64,000 bases of DNA, from IMG/VR virus record IMGVR_UViG_3300003322_000571, positions 1 to 64,000 of that record. One strand, written 5' to 3'. Every line of letters starts with the position of its first letter. Positions within the stretch are counted from its first letter, which is position 1. The translations under genes and the position numbers were made by a program. Positions 1 to 64,000 of this stretch are shown here, piece by piece. The notes under the pieces were generated by a model, which was given only the letters and a program-made list of their open reading frames with translations, did not search any database and was not told the DNA's origin.

Positions 1-36
1 AGCAGTGGGTCGGGGGTTCGAATCCCTCCACTCCGA
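1..36 (+). tRNA. 3' half of a tRNA truncated by the window edge (anticodon not visible)
   Basis: T-arm GGGGG-TTCGAAT-CCCTC followed by an acceptor 3' strand. Confidence 0.8.
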
Positions 37-88
37 CAAACTTTCTGGTGATTGAGTGGGTAATCAACTTTTAACCAAGGAGATTACT

Positions 89-496: not shown

Positions 497-498
497 CT

Positions 499-743
499 AA
501 GTTGTTGCGTGGGTAGAGACGTTCATCATTTGTTCGACTCAAATATTTCCCGCAATGTACATTTAAGAGACCATCTTGCATGGTGCTGCGATAATCGCCT
601 AAGTGGCTTGGGATGTTGGTTAGTACTCCCTTGAACGACGATCTTGCAGTTAGGACTAATCTGCACGTGTACATTGCGGGAAATCGGGCCTGGTGGCCCA
701 TGGCGGTGTGAAAACCGTAGTTTCTCCGACTTTAACTCAACTT
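499..743 (+). ncRNA. Y RNA-like (YrlA-type) RNA 1: permuted tRNA-like domain with a large insert
   Basis: Shared terminal motif GTTGTTGCGTGG...GTTCATC / TTTAACTCAAC; T-arm ATTTG-TTCGACT-CAAAT, 17-bp stem ATTTCCCGCAATGTACA/TGTACATTGCGGGAAAT, then D-like arm GGGC-CTGGTG-GCCC. Confidence 0.65.
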
Positions 744-747
744 AAAT

Positions 748-931: not shown

Positions 932-1081
932 ACTGTTGCGAAGTGCAGAATTCCTTCAGAAACTGTCGAGTGTAAACTCTTGGAGGTTCGAATCCTCCCC
1001 AATGGCCATATCGAAAGTGCTGGCAGGTGGCGAAACTGGTAGACGCGAAAGTCCAAAAAGTCTGTACAACTTAATCTCAGT
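932..1081 (+). ncRNA. Y RNA-like RNA 2: circularly permuted tRNA-Leu(CAG)-like domain
   Basis: CTGTTGCGAAG-TGCAGA-ATTCCTTC ... TCTGTAC-AAC-TTAATCTCAG; inside, the variable arm and T-arm come before the D-arm (GGCGAAACTGGTAGACGC). Confidence 0.75.
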
Positions 1082-1089
1082 GTCAAATT

Positions 1090-1174
1090 GGATGACTTAC
1101 TTCCTAGGTGGAAGCACAGCCTCGAAAGCTGATGATCTCGGAAACGGGATGGGGGTCGGTACCTCAGTCATCCG
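1090..1174 (+). tRNA. tRNA-Ser(CGA), non-canonical (probable 8/4 fold)
   Basis: GGATGACT/AGTCATCC acceptor, CAGC-CTCGAAA-GCTG, long variable arm, G73. Confidence 0.75.
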
Positions 1175-1177
1175 CAA

Positions 1178-1320
1178 ATGTGTTGTTGCGTAGTGTAGGA
1201 TTTCTTCATATCCCACGCCGTGTACGTAGGTTCGATTCCTACCTGCCGAGATTCTTGGCAGTCGTCTAGTGGTAGGACAATGGCTTCAAAAAGTGCCTGT
1301 ACGAATTTGACTCAACATAT
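1178..1320 (+). ncRNA. Y RNA-like RNA 3: circularly permuted tRNA domain
   Basis: TGTTGTTGCGTAG-TGTAGG-ATTTCTTC ... CCTGTAC-GAA-TTTGACTCAACA; T-arm GTAGG-TTCGATT-CCTAC, acceptor closed by a loop, then D-arm GTCTAGTGGTAGGAC. Confidence 0.8.
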
Positions 1321-1427: not shown

Positions 1428-1580
1428 ATGAAATTGATTGAATTGATTGTTACATTGCTTGGTGGACTAATCTCCACAGCACTTTGGATTATCCTTTGGT
1501 TTAACCCGTTGTGGTTCAGAGAGGATTTGCTTAATAAGTACTATCGATCGAACTTTTCATATTTCAACCCGTTCCGATAA
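1428..1580 (+). CDS. small membrane protein (50 aa)
   Basis: AGGTGA RBS; hydrophobic N-terminus MKLIELIVTLLGGLISTALWIILW. Confidence 0.55.
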   Translation: MKLIELIVTLLGGLISTALWIILWFNPLWFREDLLNKYYRSNFSYFNPFR

Positions 1581-1585
1581 TTTTT

Positions 1586-1716
1586 GGTAGATTGGTGTAA
1601 CGGTAGCACGCGTAAACTACCACTAATCGATCTTGTCTCGTCTAGCGACGTTGCGTAGAAAAGTGTTACTTCGCTTTCATTCGCGCGCGGTGGGGGTTCG
1701 AATCCCTCGTCTACCT
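1586..1716 (+). ncRNA. Y RNA-like RNA 4: normally ordered tRNA body with the shared stem in place of the anticodon loop
   Basis: GGTAGAT/GTCTACC acceptor with D- and T-arms; insert TTGTCTCGTC-TAGC-GACGTTGCGTAG...TTACTTC. Confidence 0.7.
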
Positions 1717-1722
1717 CAAATT

Positions 1723-1748
1723 AAAGTCGCTTCGGCGACTTTTCCTTT
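1723..1748 (+). terminator. intrinsic terminator
   Basis: AAAGTCGC-TTCG-GCGACTTTT. Confidence 0.7.
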
Positions 1749-1845
1749 TCCGGGCATGGTGCCCAAACTACAGGAAGACAGATATGGCTGTCGATTGGGA
1801 GTTCGAATCCCCCAATTCCTGCAAACTCAAAACTTACCAATAAAA

Positions 1846-4836: not shown

Positions 4837-4938
4837 AGGTCCATGGTGTAACGGCAGCATTCCGGTCTCCTAAGTGCTTGCTCTAATGAGCATTTAGGAA
4901 AACCGTCGGTCGCGGTTCGAATCCGTGTGGACCTGCCA
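4837..4938 (+). tRNA. tRNA-Trp(CCA) with a 28-nt hairpin insertion in the anticodon (4871-4898)
   Basis: AGGTCCA/TGGACCT-G-CCA; removing the insert restores CGGT-CT-CCA-AA-ACCG. Confidence 0.8.
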
Positions 4939-22736: not shown

Positions 22737-22951
22737 TGGAACTAAAGGTACGAGCAATTGTCCGTGTTAAGCGAGCAAACGTCGAGTTTGCTCCAGGACT
22801 TGGAATTGGTGTCCTTGCAACACAAGAGTTCAAAGTTCAAGTGCCGTTGGGTCGAACTGTGACCGATCACAGAGTTTCAGCTTGCATTCATGATGTTGGA
22901 CAAGCATTGCTTGACGATAGTGTAGAAGTAATCTACGAGGAAGTGAAATGA
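22736..22951 (+). CDS. hypothetical protein
   Basis: Translationally coupled ORF. Confidence 0.6.
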
Positions 22952-24021
22952 AAATCTACCTTGTCGGCGGTGCAGTTCGCGATATCCTTCTTGGTCTTGA
23001 GCCGAAGGATCGTGACTACGTCGTTGTTGGTGCAACTCCTGAAGATATGCTCGCTAAGGGCTTTTCGAAAGTTGGTGCATCGTTTCCTGTGTTCCTTCAT
23101 CCTGAAACTGGTGAAGAGTACGCTCTTGCACGTACCGAACGGAAGACGGGCGTTGGTTACAACGGGTTTGACGTGACGTTCGATACGTCTATCACTCTGG
23201 AAGATGACCTTCGTCGTCGTGATCTGACGATCAATTCAATGGCAATGGACCTCGAAACGAACGAGATCATTGATCCGTTCGGTGGTCAAAGTGATCTCAA
23301 GCGAAAGATCCTCCGTCATACAAGTGAAGCGTTTGCTGAGGATCCGGTTCGTGTTCTTCGTACTGCTCGGTTCGCAGCTCGGTACGGGTTTGATGTGTCA
23401 GAAACGACACTGGAGCTGATGGAACAGGTCGCTCCAGAACTTGACCATGTTCCTGCGGAACGAATCTTCGCCGAGTTCCAGAAGGGCTTGATGGAGAAAG
23501 CTCCGTACAGGATGCTTGGTGTACTGGTACAGTGCTACGCTGACAACGTTAAGTCGGTTGAACCATTTCTTCGTGGTGATCATGATCTGTGGCAACGTCT
23601 GCACCTTGTTCGAGATGATACGCCGTTGCATGTTCGGTTTGCTCTGATCGCTCGTCGCTTCCACCCGGAAGATTACGAAGCGTGCAAGATTCCTACAGAC
23701 CTTGCACGAGTGGCGAAAGCAGTTCAGTCGCACTTCTATCAATGGAAGGGACTTCGTACTTGCTCTGATGAACGGTTCGTTAAGATGTGTGACAGATACC
23801 GTGCTTTCAGCAACCCGGACTTCTTCCAGCAAGTGCTCGATGTATTTGAATTCATTGAACATCCGTACGCGATCAAAGGTGTATGGCGTGAACCTATCAA
23901 CGAACGTCTGGCGTTGGCAACGAGCATCGATGCTGCAACAATTGTTGCTAGTCTGCCGATTAAAGACGGCAAGTTGATTCAGGCGAAGATTCACGAAGCA
24001 CGTCTTGCCGCAATGAAGTAA
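22948..24021 (+). CDS. cca: tRNA nucleotidyltransferase (CCA-adding enzyme)
   Basis: [40 protein letters not shown]. Confidence 0.95.
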
Positions 24022-58823: not shown

Positions 58824-59766
58824 ACTACTAGGAGGCTTTTATGGCCTCGTTCTTGGTGATGCTGTTGGTGTTCCGTTTGAATTTCAACAGCCGCGCCAAC
58901 TACCGCCGCTGTCAAAAATCGACATTGTGATGGCTGATGTTCCCAAGTTCACCAAAACATATCCGCAAGTCCCGTACGGTACCTGGTCCGATGACACAGC
59001 ATTGTCATTGTGTCTTCTTGATGCGTTGCTTGATTTTACCGAGCCGGAGATGTGGCACGGCGACTTTGTCGAGAATATGCAAAATTGGCGATTCCATGGC
59101 AAATTTACTCCGTATAACGAGAAGAAATTTGACATTGGGTTGCAGACTGCCATGGCATTGACTGAACTGGAAGACGGATTGAGTATTCAGGCGCGTGTGG
59201 ACGGCCCAGATCGTTGTGGAAACGGTGCTTTGATGCGTAGCCTTCCAGTTGCCCTCGTGTATGCTTACGTACCAGACCACGACGTTCGTGCAAACTTAAT
59301 TGCCAATGTTACACTCGATCACGTCAATGCTACCCACGCGAACATGATGAGCAAGATTGTCAGTTTGGCGTATACGTTGCTGGCATCATATCTTCTCGAT
59401 GGAGTGTATTGGTTCGATGCCATTGATCTGGCGCTTGATAAGACCGAACAACTTCTTGGTGAAGCTTATAAGGATGACATGTTGAAGTTCCGAGCTTATG
59501 AGCATCGTGAACCAACAGGAACAGGCTACTCTGTTGATACATTCTGGTCTGCGATTTATGCATTGAAGGCTGGTTCAGACTTCCGTACAACGATTCAGCA
59601 TGCTATTTCACTTGGCAACGATACAGACACAACTGCATGCGTTGCTGGTGGACTCGCGGGGATTATCTACGGGTTTGATCGTCTTCCTGTTGATTGGCTT
59701 GCACATCTTCGCGATAAGCAACAAATTGATCAATATGCTCAGCGACTACTAATTATCTCACTATGA
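58810..59766 (+). CDS. ADP-ribosylglycohydrolase
   Basis: GDAVGVPFEF, WSDDT, GNGALMR, GNDTDT. Confidence 0.93.
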   Translation: MDSNKLLGGFYGLVLGDAVGVPFEFQQPRQLPPLSKIDIVMADVPKFTKTYPQVPYGTWSDDTALSLCLLDALLDFTEPEMWHGDFVENMQNWRFHGKFTPYNEKKFDIGLQTAMALTELEDGLSIQARVDGPDRCGNGALMRSLPVALVYAYVPDHDVRANLIANVTLDHVNATHANMMSKIVSLAYTLLASYLLDGVYWFDAIDLALDKTEQLLGEAYKDDMLKFRAYEHREPTGTGYSVDTFWSAIYALKAGSDFRTTIQHAISLGNDTDTTACVAGGLAGIIYGFDRLPVDWLAHLRDKQQIDQYAQRLLIISL

Positions 59767-61172: not shown

Positions 61173-61558
61173 TCGTAATGAGACGCGATCTGAAGATGCC
61201 GCGAGGAAAGATTGCGGCACAGGCAGCACATGCTTCAATGGCAGGCCTTCTCAACCATGTTACCTTCCGTCTTGAGGAAGACACGATGGAGGGATGGGCG
61301 TTGTCGATGCCGAAGAATGGTGCGATGTCACAGTGGTTGCGTGGCGCTTTCACCAAGGTTTGCGTTTGCGTTGAGAGTGAAGCTGAACTTGAGGCTGTGT
61401 ACAAGCAAGCTCAATTGGCTGGCCTCAACGTGTCAAAGATTGTCGATAACGGTTTGACTGTATTCGACAACGTTCCCACTTGGACGTGCATCGGTGTGGG
61501 GCCGGACTTCCCTGAGCGAATTGATCCAATCACTGGCCATTTGAAACTATACAATTGA
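61142..61558 (+). CDS. pth2: peptidyl-tRNA hydrolase Pth2
   Basis: KQVIVMRRDLKM..GKIAAQAAHA, IVDNGLT, IGVGP, ITGHLKLY. Confidence 0.93.
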   Translation: MESKAAPKQVIVMRRDLKMPRGKIAAQAAHASMAGLLNHVTFRLEEDTMEGWALSMPKNGAMSQWLRGAFTKVCVCVESEAELEAVYKQAQLAGLNVSKIVDNGLTVFDNVPTWTCIGVGPDFPERIDPITGHLKLYN

Positions 61559-62183
61559 CATAATACCAGTCTGTAACAGTTGGACTGTTGAGTTTAGCCA
61601 TTATTGACGAACGATGCATGTTGAGCGTACGAATAGCATCTCCTATTGAGTTGTACTTAACGCCAGCACATACCACTGGTTTTAATCGAGCTTGATTAGA
61701 AGAACGAAGTTTCACCTTTTGCTCTTCTGTCATTGGCACTCCTTTGTTGGATGCTGTTCTTCCGGTAAGCTTTTCGCGTTGTTCCAATGTCCATGGCTTT
61801 CCTTTGTTGGGCGCAGGTCGTCCCTTCAAAGATTCGGAGATCATCCGCTTGGAAAGTTCCGTGTGTGTTTTTCCGATGAATGTGCCGGATGTATTTCCGT
61901 TAGGATTTCCCTTTCCACCAACAGTTATATTCAAGCATAGTGGATCTCGTAACAACTCAGTGGTAACCAGTTCACTCTCAATCACCAACGCTTCTGCGCG
62001 TGTAGAGCAGATGCGAAGAACTTCACGCTTGAACAGCGATCGTCCGTATTTCCTGACGCTAGCTCTGATACGATTACCCGAACCTAAATAGTCATCTGTG
62101 CTCGCATTCTCCCCTGAATGTACGCCAATGTAAAATTGGTTTGTGTCAATGTTGACGGTCTTGTAAACAATGTGCTCTCTCAT
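61530..62183 (-). CDS. GIY-YIG (Seg-like) homing endonuclease
   Basis: IVYKTVN...FYIGVH, YLGSG, NUMOD3/NUMOD1 repeats. Confidence 0.9.
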   Translation of the reverse strand: MREHIVYKTVNIDTNQFYIGVHSGENASTDDYLGSGNRIRASVRKYGRSLFKREVLRICSTRAEALVIESELVTTELLRDPLCLNITVGGKGNPNGNTSGTFIGKTHTELSKRMISESLKGRPAPNKGKPWTLEQREKLTGRTASNKGVPMTEEQKVKLRSSNQARLKPVVCAGVKYNSIGDAIRTLNMHRSSIMAKLNSPTVTDWYYVNCIVSNGQ

Positions 62184-62206
62184 GATACCCCTCCAACGCT
62201 TATTTA

Positions 62207-62284
62207 TGGACTTGCATTGCGATTGGTCCAGACTTCCCTGAGAAGATCGATCCGATCACTCGTCAACTCAAGTTGTACAACTAA
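62207..62284 (+). pseudogene. orphaned original C-terminus of Pth2
   Basis: WTCIAIGPDFPEKIDPITRQLKLYN* versus WTCIGVGPDFPERIDPITGHLKLYN*. Confidence 0.9.
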
Positions 62285-62292
62285 GTACACCT

Positions 62293-62390
62293 GCCAGCGT
62301 TTCTAATATTGGCCTTAGGGGTGCCCTTATAAAGCACTAAGACCCGTCTAGATCAGGCGGTTAATGTGGGTTCGATTCCCATCGCTGGTA
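62293..62390 (+). tRNA. tRNA-Ile(TAT)-like with a long variable arm
   Basis: GCCAGCG/CGCTGGT; loop CT-TAT-AA; extra arm of about 28 nt. Confidence 0.7.
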
Positions 62391-62446
62391 CACACAACCC
62401 TAATATTTCTGTTGGGGTAACGTACTCAACCATATATACTTTCTTC

Positions 62447-62513
62447 AGCTGTTGCGTAGTTCAAGGGTTACTTCTTTTGGTGAAACTATCCCCTTGACGT
62501 TTTAATCTCAGCT
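62447..62513 (+). ncRNA. Y RNA-like RNA 6: minimal
   Basis: AGCTGTTGCGTAG-TTCAAGGG-TTACTTC...CCCTTGAC-GTT-TTAATCTCAGCT; TATACT -10 box just upstream. Confidence 0.75.
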
Positions 62514-62526
62514 TTAACATATGTAC

Positions 62527-63573: not shown

Positions 63574-64000
63574 ATGTCAAAACTCAATCCAACTGGTCGT
63601 AACGTTACGACAAACATTGTTGCGGTTGCTGCGAACCGTGGTGAACAGCTTGCTGTTTCTGCGAATGGCAACTTGCAATTCAAGAAGGACTCCTACCAGA
63701 CGTTGTACGAAACAACTGTTTCGACGATGCTTGGCAAGGGCAACCAACTGAATTCTGCTGATGCGCTTGTGCAAAAGCTGAAGGCGTCCGTTCGTTCTGT
63801 TGTTGCTGATGGCGCCAGCTCATTCGACTTCATTGCGAACCTCGCAATCCACGCACGTACGGAGATGAACGTCCGTACGATCCCAATCGTTCTTGTGGTT
63901 GAATTTGCGAAGGCGCTCGCCGATCAGCGTCAACCGTTGGTTGCACGTGTTGATGCGATTGAACAAGAACTGACTACAGCTCGTAAGGCTAAGCGTGCGA
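63574..64000 (+). CDS. Ro60/Rsr-like TROVE-domain protein (N-terminal part; runs off the window)
   Basis: GGAG RBS; open to the window end; DFIANLAIHARTEMNVRTIPIVLVVE resembles the TROVE F.A.LA.YAR..M.LR..P helix. Confidence 0.72.
   Translation, partial: MSKLNPTGRNVTTNIVAVAANRGEQLAVSANGNLQFKKDSYQTLYETTVSTMLGKGNQLNSADALVQKLKASVRSVVADGASSFDFIANLAIHARTEMNVRTIPIVLVVEFAKALADQRQPLVARVDAIEQELTTARKAKRA

What the first reader, a model, noticed from the sequence alone, without database searches (positions are those of the whole stretch)
1586..1716. Inside-out Y RNA: a normally ordered tRNA with the shared stem inserted at the anticodon
Seen: acceptor, D- and T-arms are in normal order with free ends. 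The anticodon loop is replaced by the shared motif with its strands swapped (TTGTCTCGTC-TAGC-GACGTTGCGTAG...TTACTTC), closed by a tetraloop. This is the circular permutation of copies 2 and 3. Inference: it could be matured by RNase P and the CCA enzyme and may be aminoacylated while bound to Ro60, making it a possible intermediate between tRNA and YrlA. The 3' side keeps CTTTCATTC, readable as a CAT or TCA anticodon remnant.
Basis: partly seen in the sequence, partly recalled or inferred. Interest (0 to 1): 0.85.

Follow-up and report, generated by a model that had tools for sequence, protein, structure and literature searches.

The report
tRNA-ordered phage Y RNA (un-permuted YrlA)
A giant phage carries a small RNA gene built like a normal tRNA whose anticodon arm is replaced by the hairpin-capped binding site for the Ro60 protein; it is a previously undescribed, widespread strand-order variant of the known bacterial/phage Y RNAs.

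Summary
Window 1586-1716 has a 7-bp acceptor stem with free ends, a D arm and a T arm in tRNA order. In place of the anticodon arm there is an ~80-nt module.

The module carries the motifs of phage YrlA-type Y RNAs in swapped order. The 3' tail motif (GAUCUUGUCU) comes first, then a CGUC-UAGC-GACG hairpin, then UUGCGUAG, an 8-nt stem strand and UUACUUC.

- Re-permuting the element in silico aligns it end to end with a canonical YrlA.
- I collected 24 such elements from phage and metagenome contigs.
- RNAalifold finds the same five helices. 93% of cells pair, against 40-48% when the partners are slid, and the Levitt 15:48 pair covaries.
- Many copies sit directly upstream of Ro60 (TROVE) genes.
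- This phage's own Ro60 gene starts at window 63574, with a YrlB-like RNA 1 kb upstream of it.
- Six of the 24 encode CCA after the discriminator (P about 1.5e-6).

Best reading: a Ro60-binding Y RNA matured like a tRNA.

Not supported: the "anticodon remnant" (it is a variable stem-loop), a role as an ancient tRNA-to-YrlA intermediate (the two strand orders are interspersed in the tree), and aminoacylation.

I found no description of this strand order in the literature I could search. I rate it a new variant of a known kind.

The parts
1586..1592 (+). acceptor stem, 5' strand (GGUAGAU); free 5' end of the predicted RNA
   Evidence: Pairs 7/7 with 1709-1715. All 7 pairs show double compensatory changes across 24 relatives.
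1595..1609 (+). D arm (GUGU / AACGGUA / GCAC); A15 at 1600
   Evidence: A15 pairs with U48 (1691). Across the family the Levitt pair is G:C x14 and A:U x7.
1610..1620 (+). junction GCGUAAACUAC between the D arm and the module; conserved AAACUA
   Evidence: Sequence conserved in L104, L138, L342 and in canonical copies (CUAAAACU).
1621..1628 (+). inner-stem strand CACUAAUC (equivalent to the 3' strand of a canonical YrlA stem)
   Evidence: Pairs with 1658-1665 at 6 of 8 positions, with two A.A mismatches. RNAalifold predicts the helix unprompted. All 6 pairs of this helix in the 24-sequence consensus (A6) covary.
1629..1638 (+). GAUCUUGUCU: homolog of the canonical Y RNA 3' tail (CGCUUUUAUCUC); one side of the conserved internal loop
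   Evidence: Aligns with the tail of L196 and other canonical copies.
1639..1650 (+). closing hairpin CGUC-UAGC-GACG, which replaces the open 5'/3' ends of canonical Y RNAs
   Evidence: The 3 consensus pairs covary (C-G, G-C, A-U). Loops differ between relatives: GUAA, GAAA, UAGC.
1651..1657 (+). UUGCGUA: conserved Y RNA motif (variant of GNCGAA / CGAA); presumed Ro60 contact
   Evidence: Nearly invariant in 24 relatives. The same motif occurs in Y RNAs next to TROVE genes. The motif is defined in PMC4201824 and PMC12135203.
1658..1665 (+). inner-stem strand GAAAAGUG
1666..1672 (+). conserved UUACUUC
   Evidence: Five of its seven positions are invariant, and a sixth nearly so, in the 24-sequence alignment. 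It is also present in canonical copies.
   Evidence: Loop size and sequence vary among relatives: UCAU/AUGA in L104, UUCG/CGAA vs UUCA/UGAA in L159/L285, GCUC/GAGC in L155. Read by eye and not scored.
1692..1708 (+). T arm GGGGG-UUCGAAU-CCCUC
1709..1716 (+). acceptor stem 3' strand GUCUACC plus discriminator U; followed by CAA, not CCA
1723..1752 (+). intrinsic-terminator-like hairpin AAAGUCGC-UUCG-GCGACUUU followed by a U-rich run, 7 nt after the discriminator
1554..1581 (+). weak sigma-70-like promoter match (TTTTCA-16-GATAAT) ending 4 nt before the 5' end
   Evidence: It matches 9 of 12 positions, and the number of such sites in the region is no higher than in shuffles, so this is only a hint.
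1183..1316 (+). canonical YrlA paralog: motif, V, T arm, loop-closed acceptor CUGCCGA/UUGGCAG, D arm, 3' strand and tail
933..1085 (+). YrlA-like paralog in canonical order (CGAAG motif, V hairpin, T arm, D arm, tail CAACUUAAUCUCAG); the acceptor stem-loop is irregular in this copy
   Evidence: The L104 ortholog has a clean CCUAAUG-GCAA-CAUUAGG acceptor.
62446..62516 (+). YrlB-like Y RNA (no tRNA domain) with the same motif and tail, about 1 kb upstream of Ro60
   Evidence: The fold gives a stem, an internal loop and a stem.
63574..64000 (+). 5' part of the phage Ro60 gene; the 558-aa ORF runs off the window
   Evidence: L300 is the same contig at 59652-69205. Pfam finds TROVE at 7e-21 plus VWA_2.
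22948..24021 (+). phage tRNA nucleotidyltransferase (CCA-adding enzyme family)
   Evidence: Pfam PolyA_pol 2e-22 and PolyA_pol_RNAbd.

Best explanation
Window 1586-1716 encodes a Y RNA of the YrlA family in which the strand order of the tRNA-like domain is that of a real tRNA.

Shown:
- The molecule has a 7-bp acceptor stem with free ends, a D arm, a T arm and the 15:48 tertiary pair.
[quoted passage not shown] One side is UUGCGUA and the other is GAUCUUGUCU.
- A 3-4-bp hairpin caps this helix. Canonical Y RNAs have their 5' and 3' ends at that point.
- The element is the exact circular permutation of canonical phage YrlAs.
- The design recurs in many uncultured phages, often in the YrlA slot right upstream of Ro60.

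Inferred:
- It is transcribed as its own short unit. A terminator hairpin follows it.
- It is trimmed like a tRNA by RNase P and 3' processing, and receives CCA from the phage or host CCA-adding enzyme.
- Its internal loop binds the phage's own Ro60.
- The L-shaped domain, here with a free CCA end, tethers Ro60 to a tRNA-binding partner or to an exoribonuclease, as known Y RNAs do.
- The permutation most likely arose by fusing the D half of one tandem YrlA copy to the T half of the next.
For: Anatomy.

The syntenic ortholog in a 183-kb relative has a compensated acceptor (AGUCAGA/UCUGACU) and a compensated hairpin (CGC-GUAA-GCG).

Unprompted RNAalifold consensus:
- 10 sequences: five helices, 19 of 27 pairs with double changes.
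- 24 sequences: 22 of 25 pairs with double changes.
- Pair counts: 92.9% of cells paired against 40-48% when slid; covariation 0.87 against at most 0.21; 0 of 500 shuffles reach the observed values; Levitt pair G:C x14 and A:U x7.

Permutation: the re-ordered element aligns colinearly with the canonical L196 copy (score 112, native order 70, shuffled 21 +/- 4).

Link to Ro60:
- The same motif occurs in four tandem Y RNAs upstream of a TROVE+vWA gene. Two of these hit Rfam YrlA below its gathering score (50.3 bits, E 7e-9, and 32.4 bits). Another canonical copy hits at 39.4 bits.
- tRNA-ordered copies lie 86-163 nt upstream of Ro60 in L155, L159 and L164. Others lie upstream of Ro60 in L095 (two copies), L036, L054, L060, L285, L288, L223 and L271.
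- The window's own contig encodes Ro60 starting at 63574, with a YrlB-like RNA upstream.

Acceptor end in use: NCCA is encoded in 6 of 24 copies (P = 1.5e-6), C74 in 15 of 24, and discriminator A in 15 of 24. A phage CCA-adding enzyme is present. A terminator follows the gene.

Origin: tandem arrays and long-linker forms (L137, L178, L183, L185) look like intermediates.

Precedent: M. smegmatis YrlA is cut by RNase P and receives CCA in vivo (PMC4201824). A phage Ro60 binds phage Y RNAs with a CGAA internal loop and recruits host PNPase (PMC12135203).
Against: - There are no expression, processing or binding data.
- The minimum-free-energy fold of the window copy does not give the consensus. 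It is -38.4 kcal/mol, against -33.1 with the consensus enforced, and the z-score against shuffles is only -0.86.
- The inner stem of the window copy has two A.A mismatches.
- The motif reads UGCGUAG, not the published GNCGAAG.
- Rfam YrlA and tRNA models do not hit the window copy at E <= 10.
- The Ro60 gene is about 62 kb away rather than adjacent.
- I picked relatives partly by acceptor and D-arm pairing, so those two helices are partly selected for. The inner stem, the hairpin and the Levitt pair were not.
- The CM E-values are rough.
- Six cultured Ro60-encoding phages that I checked have only canonical or tandem copies.
Confidence: 0.75

Rival explanations
1. It is a real tRNA gene, for example an opal suppressor with anticodon UCA, interrupted by a 60-nt intron that is removed to give a decoding tRNA.
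For: ARAGORN with introns allowed draws an anticodon stem GCGUA/CGCGC and a loop UUUCAUU with UCA. The window holds other odd tRNA-like genes with insertions.
Against: - The proposed anticodon stem and the UCA are absent from the closest ortholog and from most relatives.
- The 'intron' is the most conserved part. It carries Y RNA motifs and covarying helices.
- No group I intron or other ribozyme family matches.
- 60 nt is far below the size of bacterial self-splicing introns, and bacteria lack a tRNA splicing endonuclease (established knowledge).
- Relatives sit in the YrlA slot upstream of Ro60.
Confidence: 0.03
2. It is a by-product of tandem YrlA arrays: the D half of one decayed copy happens to lie next to the T half of another, and no single functional RNA is made.
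For: Tandem canonical arrays give weaker matches to my model, at 25-63 bits (L007, L097, L062, CcrColossus). The neighbouring window copies 933-1316 can be read either way.
Against: - There is no partner T half upstream and no D half downstream of 1586-1716. An ORF and a terminator flank it.
- The two acceptor strands pair 7/7 and covary in 24 independent elements.
- A short capped hairpin of conserved length joins the halves.
- CCA is encoded exactly after the discriminator in 6 of 24.
- In several Ro60 loci it is the only tRNA-like Y RNA I saw upstream of the gene.
Confidence: 0.07
3. It is a tRNA-like decoy or regulator that acts through its acceptor/CCA end, for example by titrating a host tRNA-targeting nuclease or a tRNA-modifying or charging enzyme. 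Ro60 would not be the essential partner.
For: The element lies in the phage's tRNA island, 62 kb from Ro60. Copies in other jumbo-phage contigs (L104, L138, L142, L181, L184, L191) have no Ro60 within the fetched flanks. CCA ends are enriched.
Against: The most conserved nucleotides are those of the Y RNA internal loop, not of the acceptor end, which varies freely. The same module is found in YrlB-like RNAs that have no tRNA domain, next to Ro60. The window's genome does encode Ro60.
Confidence: 0.12

Closest known systems
YrlA (Y RNA-like A; Rfam RF02553; Chen et al. 2014, PMC4201824; crystal structure in Wang et al. 2018, bioRxiv 10.1101/312249)
   Same: - The tRNA-like domain has T arm, D arm, 7-bp acceptor, Levitt pair and V stem-loop.
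- The Ro60-binding helix projects from the anticodon position.
- It has a CG(A/U)A motif in an internal loop.
- It is encoded by phages that carry Ro60, often directly upstream of the gene and beside a YrlB-like RNA.
- Both halves of the window element align with canonical phage YrlAs.
   Different: - The strand order is D before T, as in tRNA.
- The 5' and 3' ends are at the acceptor stem, and some copies encode CCA.
- The Ro60-binding helix is closed by a small hairpin instead of carrying the RNA ends.
- The Rfam model does not detect it.
[quoted passage not shown]
   Same: The end product is a tRNA-like domain with an opened 7-bp acceptor stem and a CCA end, attached to a Ro60-binding helix.
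   Different: There the opened form consists of two RNA pieces made by cleavage of a canonical precursor. Here the same shape would be one continuous chain, fixed in the gene.
Deinococcus radiodurans Yrn1
   Same: It is a Y RNA in which D-like and T-like elements follow tRNA order (PMC4201824).
   Different: In Yrn1 the 5' and 3' ends form the Ro60-binding helix at the acceptor position, and a small stem-loop sits at the anticodon position. Here the ends form a true acceptor stem and the Ro60 module is at the anticodon position.
Circularly permuted tRNA genes of red algae and some archaea (cited in 10.1101/312249)
   Same: They show that tRNA-shaped RNAs can exist in both strand orders and convert between them.
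   Different: Those are precursors that are processed into decoding tRNAs. This element has no anticodon arm and carries a protein-binding module.
tmRNA
   Same: It is a tRNA-like acceptor/T domain with a CCA end joined to a large non-tRNA insert.
   Different: tmRNA has no proper D arm, carries a tag ORF and pseudoknots, and is charged with alanine through G3:U70. None of these is present here.

Membership tests
YrlA-type Y RNA (Chen 2014; Rfam RF02553) | Conserved Ro60-contact motif GNCGAA(N)G in a bulged or internal-loop helix | tested here: inconclusive
   The window copy has UUGCGUAG (CGUA for CGAA, U for the first G). The paralog at 935 has UGCGAAG. The motif is nearly invariant in 24 relatives and is shared with Y RNAs flanking TROVE genes. 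Binding was not tested.
YrlA-type Y RNA (Chen 2014; Rfam RF02553) | tRNA-like domain: T arm, D arm, acceptor stem, conserved tertiary nucleotides including a covarying 15:48 pair | tested here: met
   U8, A14 and G18 (and G19 in 23 of 24 copies) are conserved, as is the T-loop UUC(G/A)A. The 15:48 pair is G:C x14 and A:U x7.
YrlA-type Y RNA (Chen 2014; Rfam RF02553) | Topology: 5'/3' ends in the Ro60-binding helix, T arm 5' of D arm, acceptor closed by a loop | tested here: not met
   The order is acceptor 5' strand, D arm, module, T arm, acceptor 3' strand. The module is closed by a hairpin.
YrlA-type Y RNA (Chen 2014; Rfam RF02553) | Encoded next to a Ro60/TROVE gene | tested here: inconclusive
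   In the window's genome Ro60 starts at 63574, about 62 kb from the element. At least 11 tRNA-ordered relatives lie within about 50-800 nt upstream of Ro60 (most within about 350 nt), for example L155, L159, L164, L285, L288, L223, L271, L036 and L060.
YrlA-type Y RNA (Chen 2014; Rfam RF02553) | Rfam RF02553 score at or above the gathering threshold (69 bits) | tested here: not met
   No hit at E <= 10. This is expected for a permuted sequence. Even canonical relatives reach only 32-50 bits.
YrlA-type Y RNA (Chen 2014; Rfam RF02553) | Physical association with Ro60 | not testable with these tools
   This needs co-immunoprecipitation or a gel-shift assay with the protein of L300:3923-5596.
Decoding tRNA (Rfam RF00005) | Acceptor, D and T arms in order, with free ends | tested here: met
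Decoding tRNA (Rfam RF00005) | 5-bp anticodon stem with a 7-nt loop carrying an anticodon | tested here: not met
   No conserved helix joins the segment after the D arm to the segment before the variable region. The ARAGORN stem GCGUA/CGCGC is missing in L104 and others.
Decoding tRNA (Rfam RF00005) | Detected by standard tRNA finders | tested here: inconclusive
   Default ARAGORN and Rfam do not call the window copy. ARAGORN -i calls it with a 60-nt intron. The L005 ortholog scores 40.4 bits on RF00005.
tRNA with self-splicing (group I) intron | The insert folds as a group I intron or matches an intron or ribozyme family | tested here: not met
   There is no Rfam match at E <= 10. The insert is 60-80 nt with a simple stem, loop and stem.
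Yrn1-type Y RNA (Deinococcus) | Ro60-binding helix formed by the paired 5' and 3' ends of the RNA | tested here: not met
   The ends form a 7-bp acceptor stem, and the Ro60 module is internal.

The most novel reading that the evidence does not exclude
These tRNA-ordered Y RNAs are mature, CCA-tailed and possibly chargeable tRNA mimics. They would carry Ro60 into the tRNA world: to EF-Tu and the ribosome, to tRNA repair or CCA-turnover enzymes, or to host anticodon nucleases. Phages with large tRNA sets would then use a Ro60 RNP to police or protect their tRNA pool. Because both strand orders interconvert, nature would also have supplied a set of matched pairs for testing what the free acceptor end adds.
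Probability: 0.12. Interest if true: 0.85.

Novelty: new variant of a known kind. Interest (0 to 1): 0.64.

Why it matters
YrlA RNAs are described as circularly permuted tRNAs with a closed acceptor loop and no free CCA end. What their tRNA-like domain binds is still unknown.

A recurrent, conserved version with tRNA strand order and, in a quarter of cases, an encoded CCA has three consequences.

- A free acceptor end is compatible with Y RNA function and may be used by it.
- It offers natural matched pairs, canonical and un-permuted, sometimes in one genome as here. These allow direct tests of RNase P processing, CCA addition, charging and partner binding.
- It bears on the dimeric-tRNA model for the origin of YrlA, because tandem arrays and long-linker forms show how the two orders interconvert.

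It also matters for annotation. Standard tRNA finders and the Rfam YrlA model did not call the window copy, so similar copies in phage genomes may go unannotated or be called tRNA pseudogenes or intron-containing tRNAs.

Tried and rejected
- **Rfam on the window.** Only tRNA hits appear at gathering threshold or at E <= 10. There is no YrlA, intron or ribozyme hit for 1586-1716.
- **Single-sequence folding.** The MFE does not recover the module, so thermodynamics alone is uninformative for this copy.
I paired UCUUGUCU with AGAAAAG. This was rejected because L138 cannot form it and RNAalifold prefers CACUAAUC/GAAAAGUG.
- **Hammerhead-like CUGAUGA...GAAAC at about 1128-1150.** There is no room for stem II and no Rfam hit, so I dropped it.
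- **Looking for Ro60 in the window by tblastn with L007-type proteins.** This was negative because only the divergent N-terminal 142 residues lie inside the window.
- **Two related-loci runs for Ro60.** Both listed only the best 80 loci and missed the contig. A third run with jumbo-phage Ro60s found it.
- **Syntenic relatives found through the downstream 79-aa protein.** Of 35 loci, only the L104 contig keeps the element, so this gave no extra orthologs.
- **blastn of the element against 50,697 GenBank phages.** No homolog.
- **Six cultured Ro60 phages scanned with my model.** Only canonical or tandem arrays.
- **ARAGORN 'tRNA' at 59206-59432.** It lies inside the ADP-ribosylglycohydrolase ORF and is a false positive.
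- **Two reviews on bacterial Y RNAs (PMC10870794, PMC6047535).** They are not held in the library, so the claim of novelty rests on the papers I could search.

Full report
**Source and setting.** The window is the first 64 kb of a 350,089-bp viral contig, IMGVR_UViG_3300003322_000571. It holds about 30 tRNA genes, a CCA-adding enzyme, a YqeY-like protein, PTH2, NAMPT and NAD kinase, and tail-fibre-like repeats. No close relative exists among 50,697 GenBank phages. Positions 300-1830 are about 1.5 kb of almost ORF-free sequence packed with T-arm motifs.

**The observation.**
- The acceptor stem is 7 bp: 1586-1592 pairs with 1709-1715, and the discriminator is U1716.
- The D arm is 1595-1609.
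- The T arm is 1692-1708.
- Between them lies TTGTCTC, the hairpin CGTC-TAGC-GACG, TTGCGTAG and TTACTTC.

Default ARAGORN and Rfam do not call it.

The motif GTTGCG(A/T)(A/G)G recurs at 504, 935, 1185, 1650 and 62451. A 23-nt repeat family links the copies at 935, 1185 and 1650, each 44-50 nt upstream of a T arm.

**What the shared motif is.**
- A pattern scan found the motif in another viral contig, L007. There, four tandem small RNAs carry it.
- Those RNAs lie directly upstream of a 440-aa ORF that Pfam assigns to TROVE plus the Ro60 vWA domain.
- Two of them match Rfam YrlA below its gathering score of 69 bits: 50.3 bits (E 7e-9) and 32.4 bits. Another canonical carrier of the motif scores 39.4 bits.
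- In these canonical RNAs the order is motif, V stem-loop, T arm, loop-closed acceptor, D arm, 3' strand, and a U-rich tail ending in CUC. This is the published YrlA layout (PMC4201824).
- The window copy at 1183-1316 has exactly this layout, with a 7/7 loop-closed acceptor.

**The phage has its own Ro60.** Two Ro60 searches listed only their best 80 loci and missed the contig. A third search, seeded with Ro60 proteins from related ~350-kb phages, found it. L300 is the window's own contig at 59652-69205. It carries a 558-aa ORF with TROVE (7e-21) and VWA_2 domains. The start codon is at window 63574, so only 142 codons lie inside the window. About 1 kb upstream, at 62446-62516, is a YrlB-like RNA with the same motif and tail. 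It folds as a stem, an internal loop and a stem.

**Structure of the element.**
- A metagenome scan for the motif plus a T arm gave 62 loci.
- A script sorted the hits by where the partner of the acceptor 3' strand lies. About 25 were canonical. Ten were stand-alone tRNA-ordered elements of 127-135 nt.
- RNAalifold on a plain MAFFT alignment of the ten predicted five helices: acceptor, D arm, an inner stem, a 3-bp capped hairpin and the T arm. It had no input from me on the structure. Nineteen of 27 pairs showed double compensatory changes.
- A covariance model built from this alignment found more copies upstream of Ro60 genes and in a 330-kb contig binned as a bacterial MAG.
- With 24 sequences, RNAalifold gave the same five helices, and 22 of 25 pairs showed double changes.
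- Counts on that alignment: 92.9% of cells pair, against 40-48% with partners slid by 1-3 columns. The covariation score is 0.87 against at most 0.21. None of 500 shuffles reaches the observed values.
- The 15:48 tertiary pair reads G:C in 14 sequences and A:U in 7.
- Acceptor and D-arm pairing were part of my selection, so those two helices are partly circular evidence. The inner stem, the hairpin, the Levitt pair and most of the T stem were not selected for.

**Register of the module.** The comparison fixes the layout in the window as follows:
- D arm
- GCGUAAACUAC
- [CACUAAUC]
- GAUCUUGUCU
- [CGUC-UAGC-GACG]
- UUGCGUA
- [GAAAAGUG]
- UUACUUC
- V stem-loop
- CGCGGU
- T arm

The GAUCUUGUCU run is the homolog of the canonical 3' tail (CGCUUUUAUCUC). 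It lies opposite UUGCGUA in a conserved internal loop. This is the kind of CGAA-containing internal loop that a phage Ro60 was shown to need (PMC12135203).

**Direct test of the permutation.** I cut the window element in the tetraloop and joined the T half to the D half. The result aligns colinearly with the canonical YrlA of L196 across both halves. The score is 112, against 70 for the native order and 21 +/- 4 for shuffles. The T arm plus acceptor strand and the D arm are nearly identical.

**Link to Ro60 for the tRNA-ordered form.** tblastn shows Ro60 genes 86-163 nt downstream of the element in L155, L159 and L164. The copies in L095 (two), L036, L054, L060, L285, L288, L223 and L271 also lie just upstream of Ro60. 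In several of these a YrlB-like RNA lies close by, upstream (L285, L288, L223, L271) or downstream (L095, L036, L054, L060). In those loci the element occupies the YrlA slot.

**Is the acceptor end used?**
- Six of 24 elements encode CCA right after the discriminator. About 0.4 would be expected by chance (P = 1.5e-6).
- Fifteen of 24 have C74, and 15 of 24 have discriminator A.
- Among 22 canonical copies, 2 have NCCA at the start of the acceptor loop.
- The window copy has UCAA, so it would need CCA addition. The phage encodes the enzyme.
- A terminator-like hairpin starts 7 nt after the discriminator. A weak promoter-like match ends 4 nt before the 5' end.

**Evolution.**
- In a maximum-likelihood tree of 16 tRNA-ordered and 22 canonical elements, all put in one order, the two topologies are interspersed. 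The best-supported branches force at least two switches, and the label is no more clustered than in shuffles.
- The tree is poorly resolved and unrooted, so the direction of change is unknown.
- Tandem arrays (L007, L137) and elements with 90-150-nt linkers (L178, L183, L185) show a simple route: fuse the D half of one copy to the T half of the next.
- This argues against a single ancient intermediate between tRNA and YrlA. It fits repeated interconversion.

**What is not supported.**
- The CTTTCATTC "anticodon remnant" lies in the loop of the V stem-loop. Its length and sequence vary, and the stem shows compensatory changes such as UUCG/CGAA versus UUCA/UGAA.
- ARAGORN's anticodon stem is not conserved.
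- Nothing speaks for aminoacylation. Acceptor stems vary freely and there is no G3:U70.

**Limits.**
- The window copy's MFE fold differs from the consensus. It is 5.3 kcal/mol more stable than the best fold with the consensus enforced, and it is no more stable than shuffles. The L342 copy folds into the consensus on its own.
- The distance to Ro60 is 62 kb.
- No cultured phage among the six I examined has the form.

**Literature.** Full-text searches found the YrlA papers, a 2025 phage Ro60 study, a jumbo-phage survey that mentions TROVE proteins, and a 2026 preprint on other tRNA mimics. None describes a tRNA-ordered Y RNA. Wang et al. describe YrlAs as resembling circularly permuted tRNAs and speculate that some might be processed toward tRNA-like forms. 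Two reviews were not available.

**Verdict.** The element is best filed as a new topological variant of the YrlA family. It works like a YrlA but fails the family's defining strand order.

Noticed in passing
window 63574-64000 (continues in L300:3923-5599): Phage Ro60 ortholog: a 558-aa ORF with TROVE and VWA_2 domains. A gp23-like major capsid gene follows at L300 6163-7485, and a prohead protease-like ORF lies at L300 3002-3406.
   Followed up: yes
window 62446-62516: YrlB-like Y RNA with no tRNA domain. It carries the same UGUUGCGUAG...UUACUUC...CGUUUUAAUCUCAG motifs and lies about 1 kb upstream of Ro60.
   Followed up: partly
window 498-745: A long (~250 nt) Y RNA-like element directly after tRNA-Pro. 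It has the 5' motif GUUGCGUGG, a degenerate T-arm-like UUGUUCGACUCAA, a perfect 17-bp inverted repeat (545-561 / 668-684) and the 3' tail CGACUUUAACUCAAC. It is conserved in L104/L005.
   Followed up: partly
window 933-1316: Two YrlA paralogs lie in tandem. The D half of the first (acceptor strand UGGCAGG, 1021-1027) also pairs 7/7 with the acceptor 3' strand after the T arm of the second (1243-1249). ARAGORN therefore calls 1021-1249 a tRNA with a 141-nt intron. This may be alternative or daisy-chain pairing.
   Followed up: partly
window 1768-1822 and window 1-39: Mini tRNA-like elements consisting of an acceptor stem (CAGGAA/UUCCUG), one small hairpin and a T arm, with no D arm. The sequence at the very start of the contig is 76% identical to 1787-1827 and is cut by the contig end.
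   Followed up: no
window 4837-4938: A tRNA-like gene (Rfam tRNA 41.4 bits). Its anticodon stem is extended by a ~30-nt hairpin whose end loop reads CUCUAAU (CUA). It ends in an encoded GCCA. Default ARAGORN misses it.
   Followed up: no
window 62293-62390: A tRNA-like gene (Rfam 32.4 bits) with a 9-nt loop CCUUAUAAA (possible UUA or UAU anticodon) and a long variable arm. It could be a suppressor-type tRNA. I did not test the coding sequences for in-frame stops.
   Followed up: no
window 61178-62285: A PTH2 peptidyl-tRNA hydrolase gene (61178-61558) is followed on the opposite strand by a GIY-YIG/NUMOD3 homing-endonuclease-like ORF (61530-62183). After that comes a second, diverged copy of the last ~70 nt of PTH2 (62217-62285). 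It looks like a homing-endonuclease insertion with duplication of the target end.
   Followed up: partly
L347 (Caulobacter phage CcrColossus JX100810) ~1978-2140: A canonical YrlA whose acceptor 'loop' is ACCA, then a GC-rich hairpin, then AUGAC. This layout suggests cleavage and a CCA end, as in M. smegmatis. The GenBank record annotates its T half as tRNA-Gln.
   Followed up: partly
L137 8600-8833; L178 1539-1698; L183 1355-1512; L185 219-441: tRNA-ordered Y RNAs with long (90-150 nt) linkers instead of the short capping hairpin. There is also a tandem array in which one D half can pair with either neighbouring T half. These are plausible intermediates of the permutation.
   Followed up: partly
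L342/L338 (CAZFPB010000002.1, 330,120 bp, labelled Pseudobdellovibrionaceae MAG): This contig carries a close relative of the window element (108.9 bits, ends in ACCA) and two more motif copies. Its size and content suggest a jumbo phage binned as a bacterial MAG.
   Followed up: no
L161 1408-1804 (-): A permuted (two-piece) tmRNA gene (Rfam tmRNA_permuted, 123 bits) lies in a contig that also carries Ro60 and a canonical YrlA.
   Followed up: no
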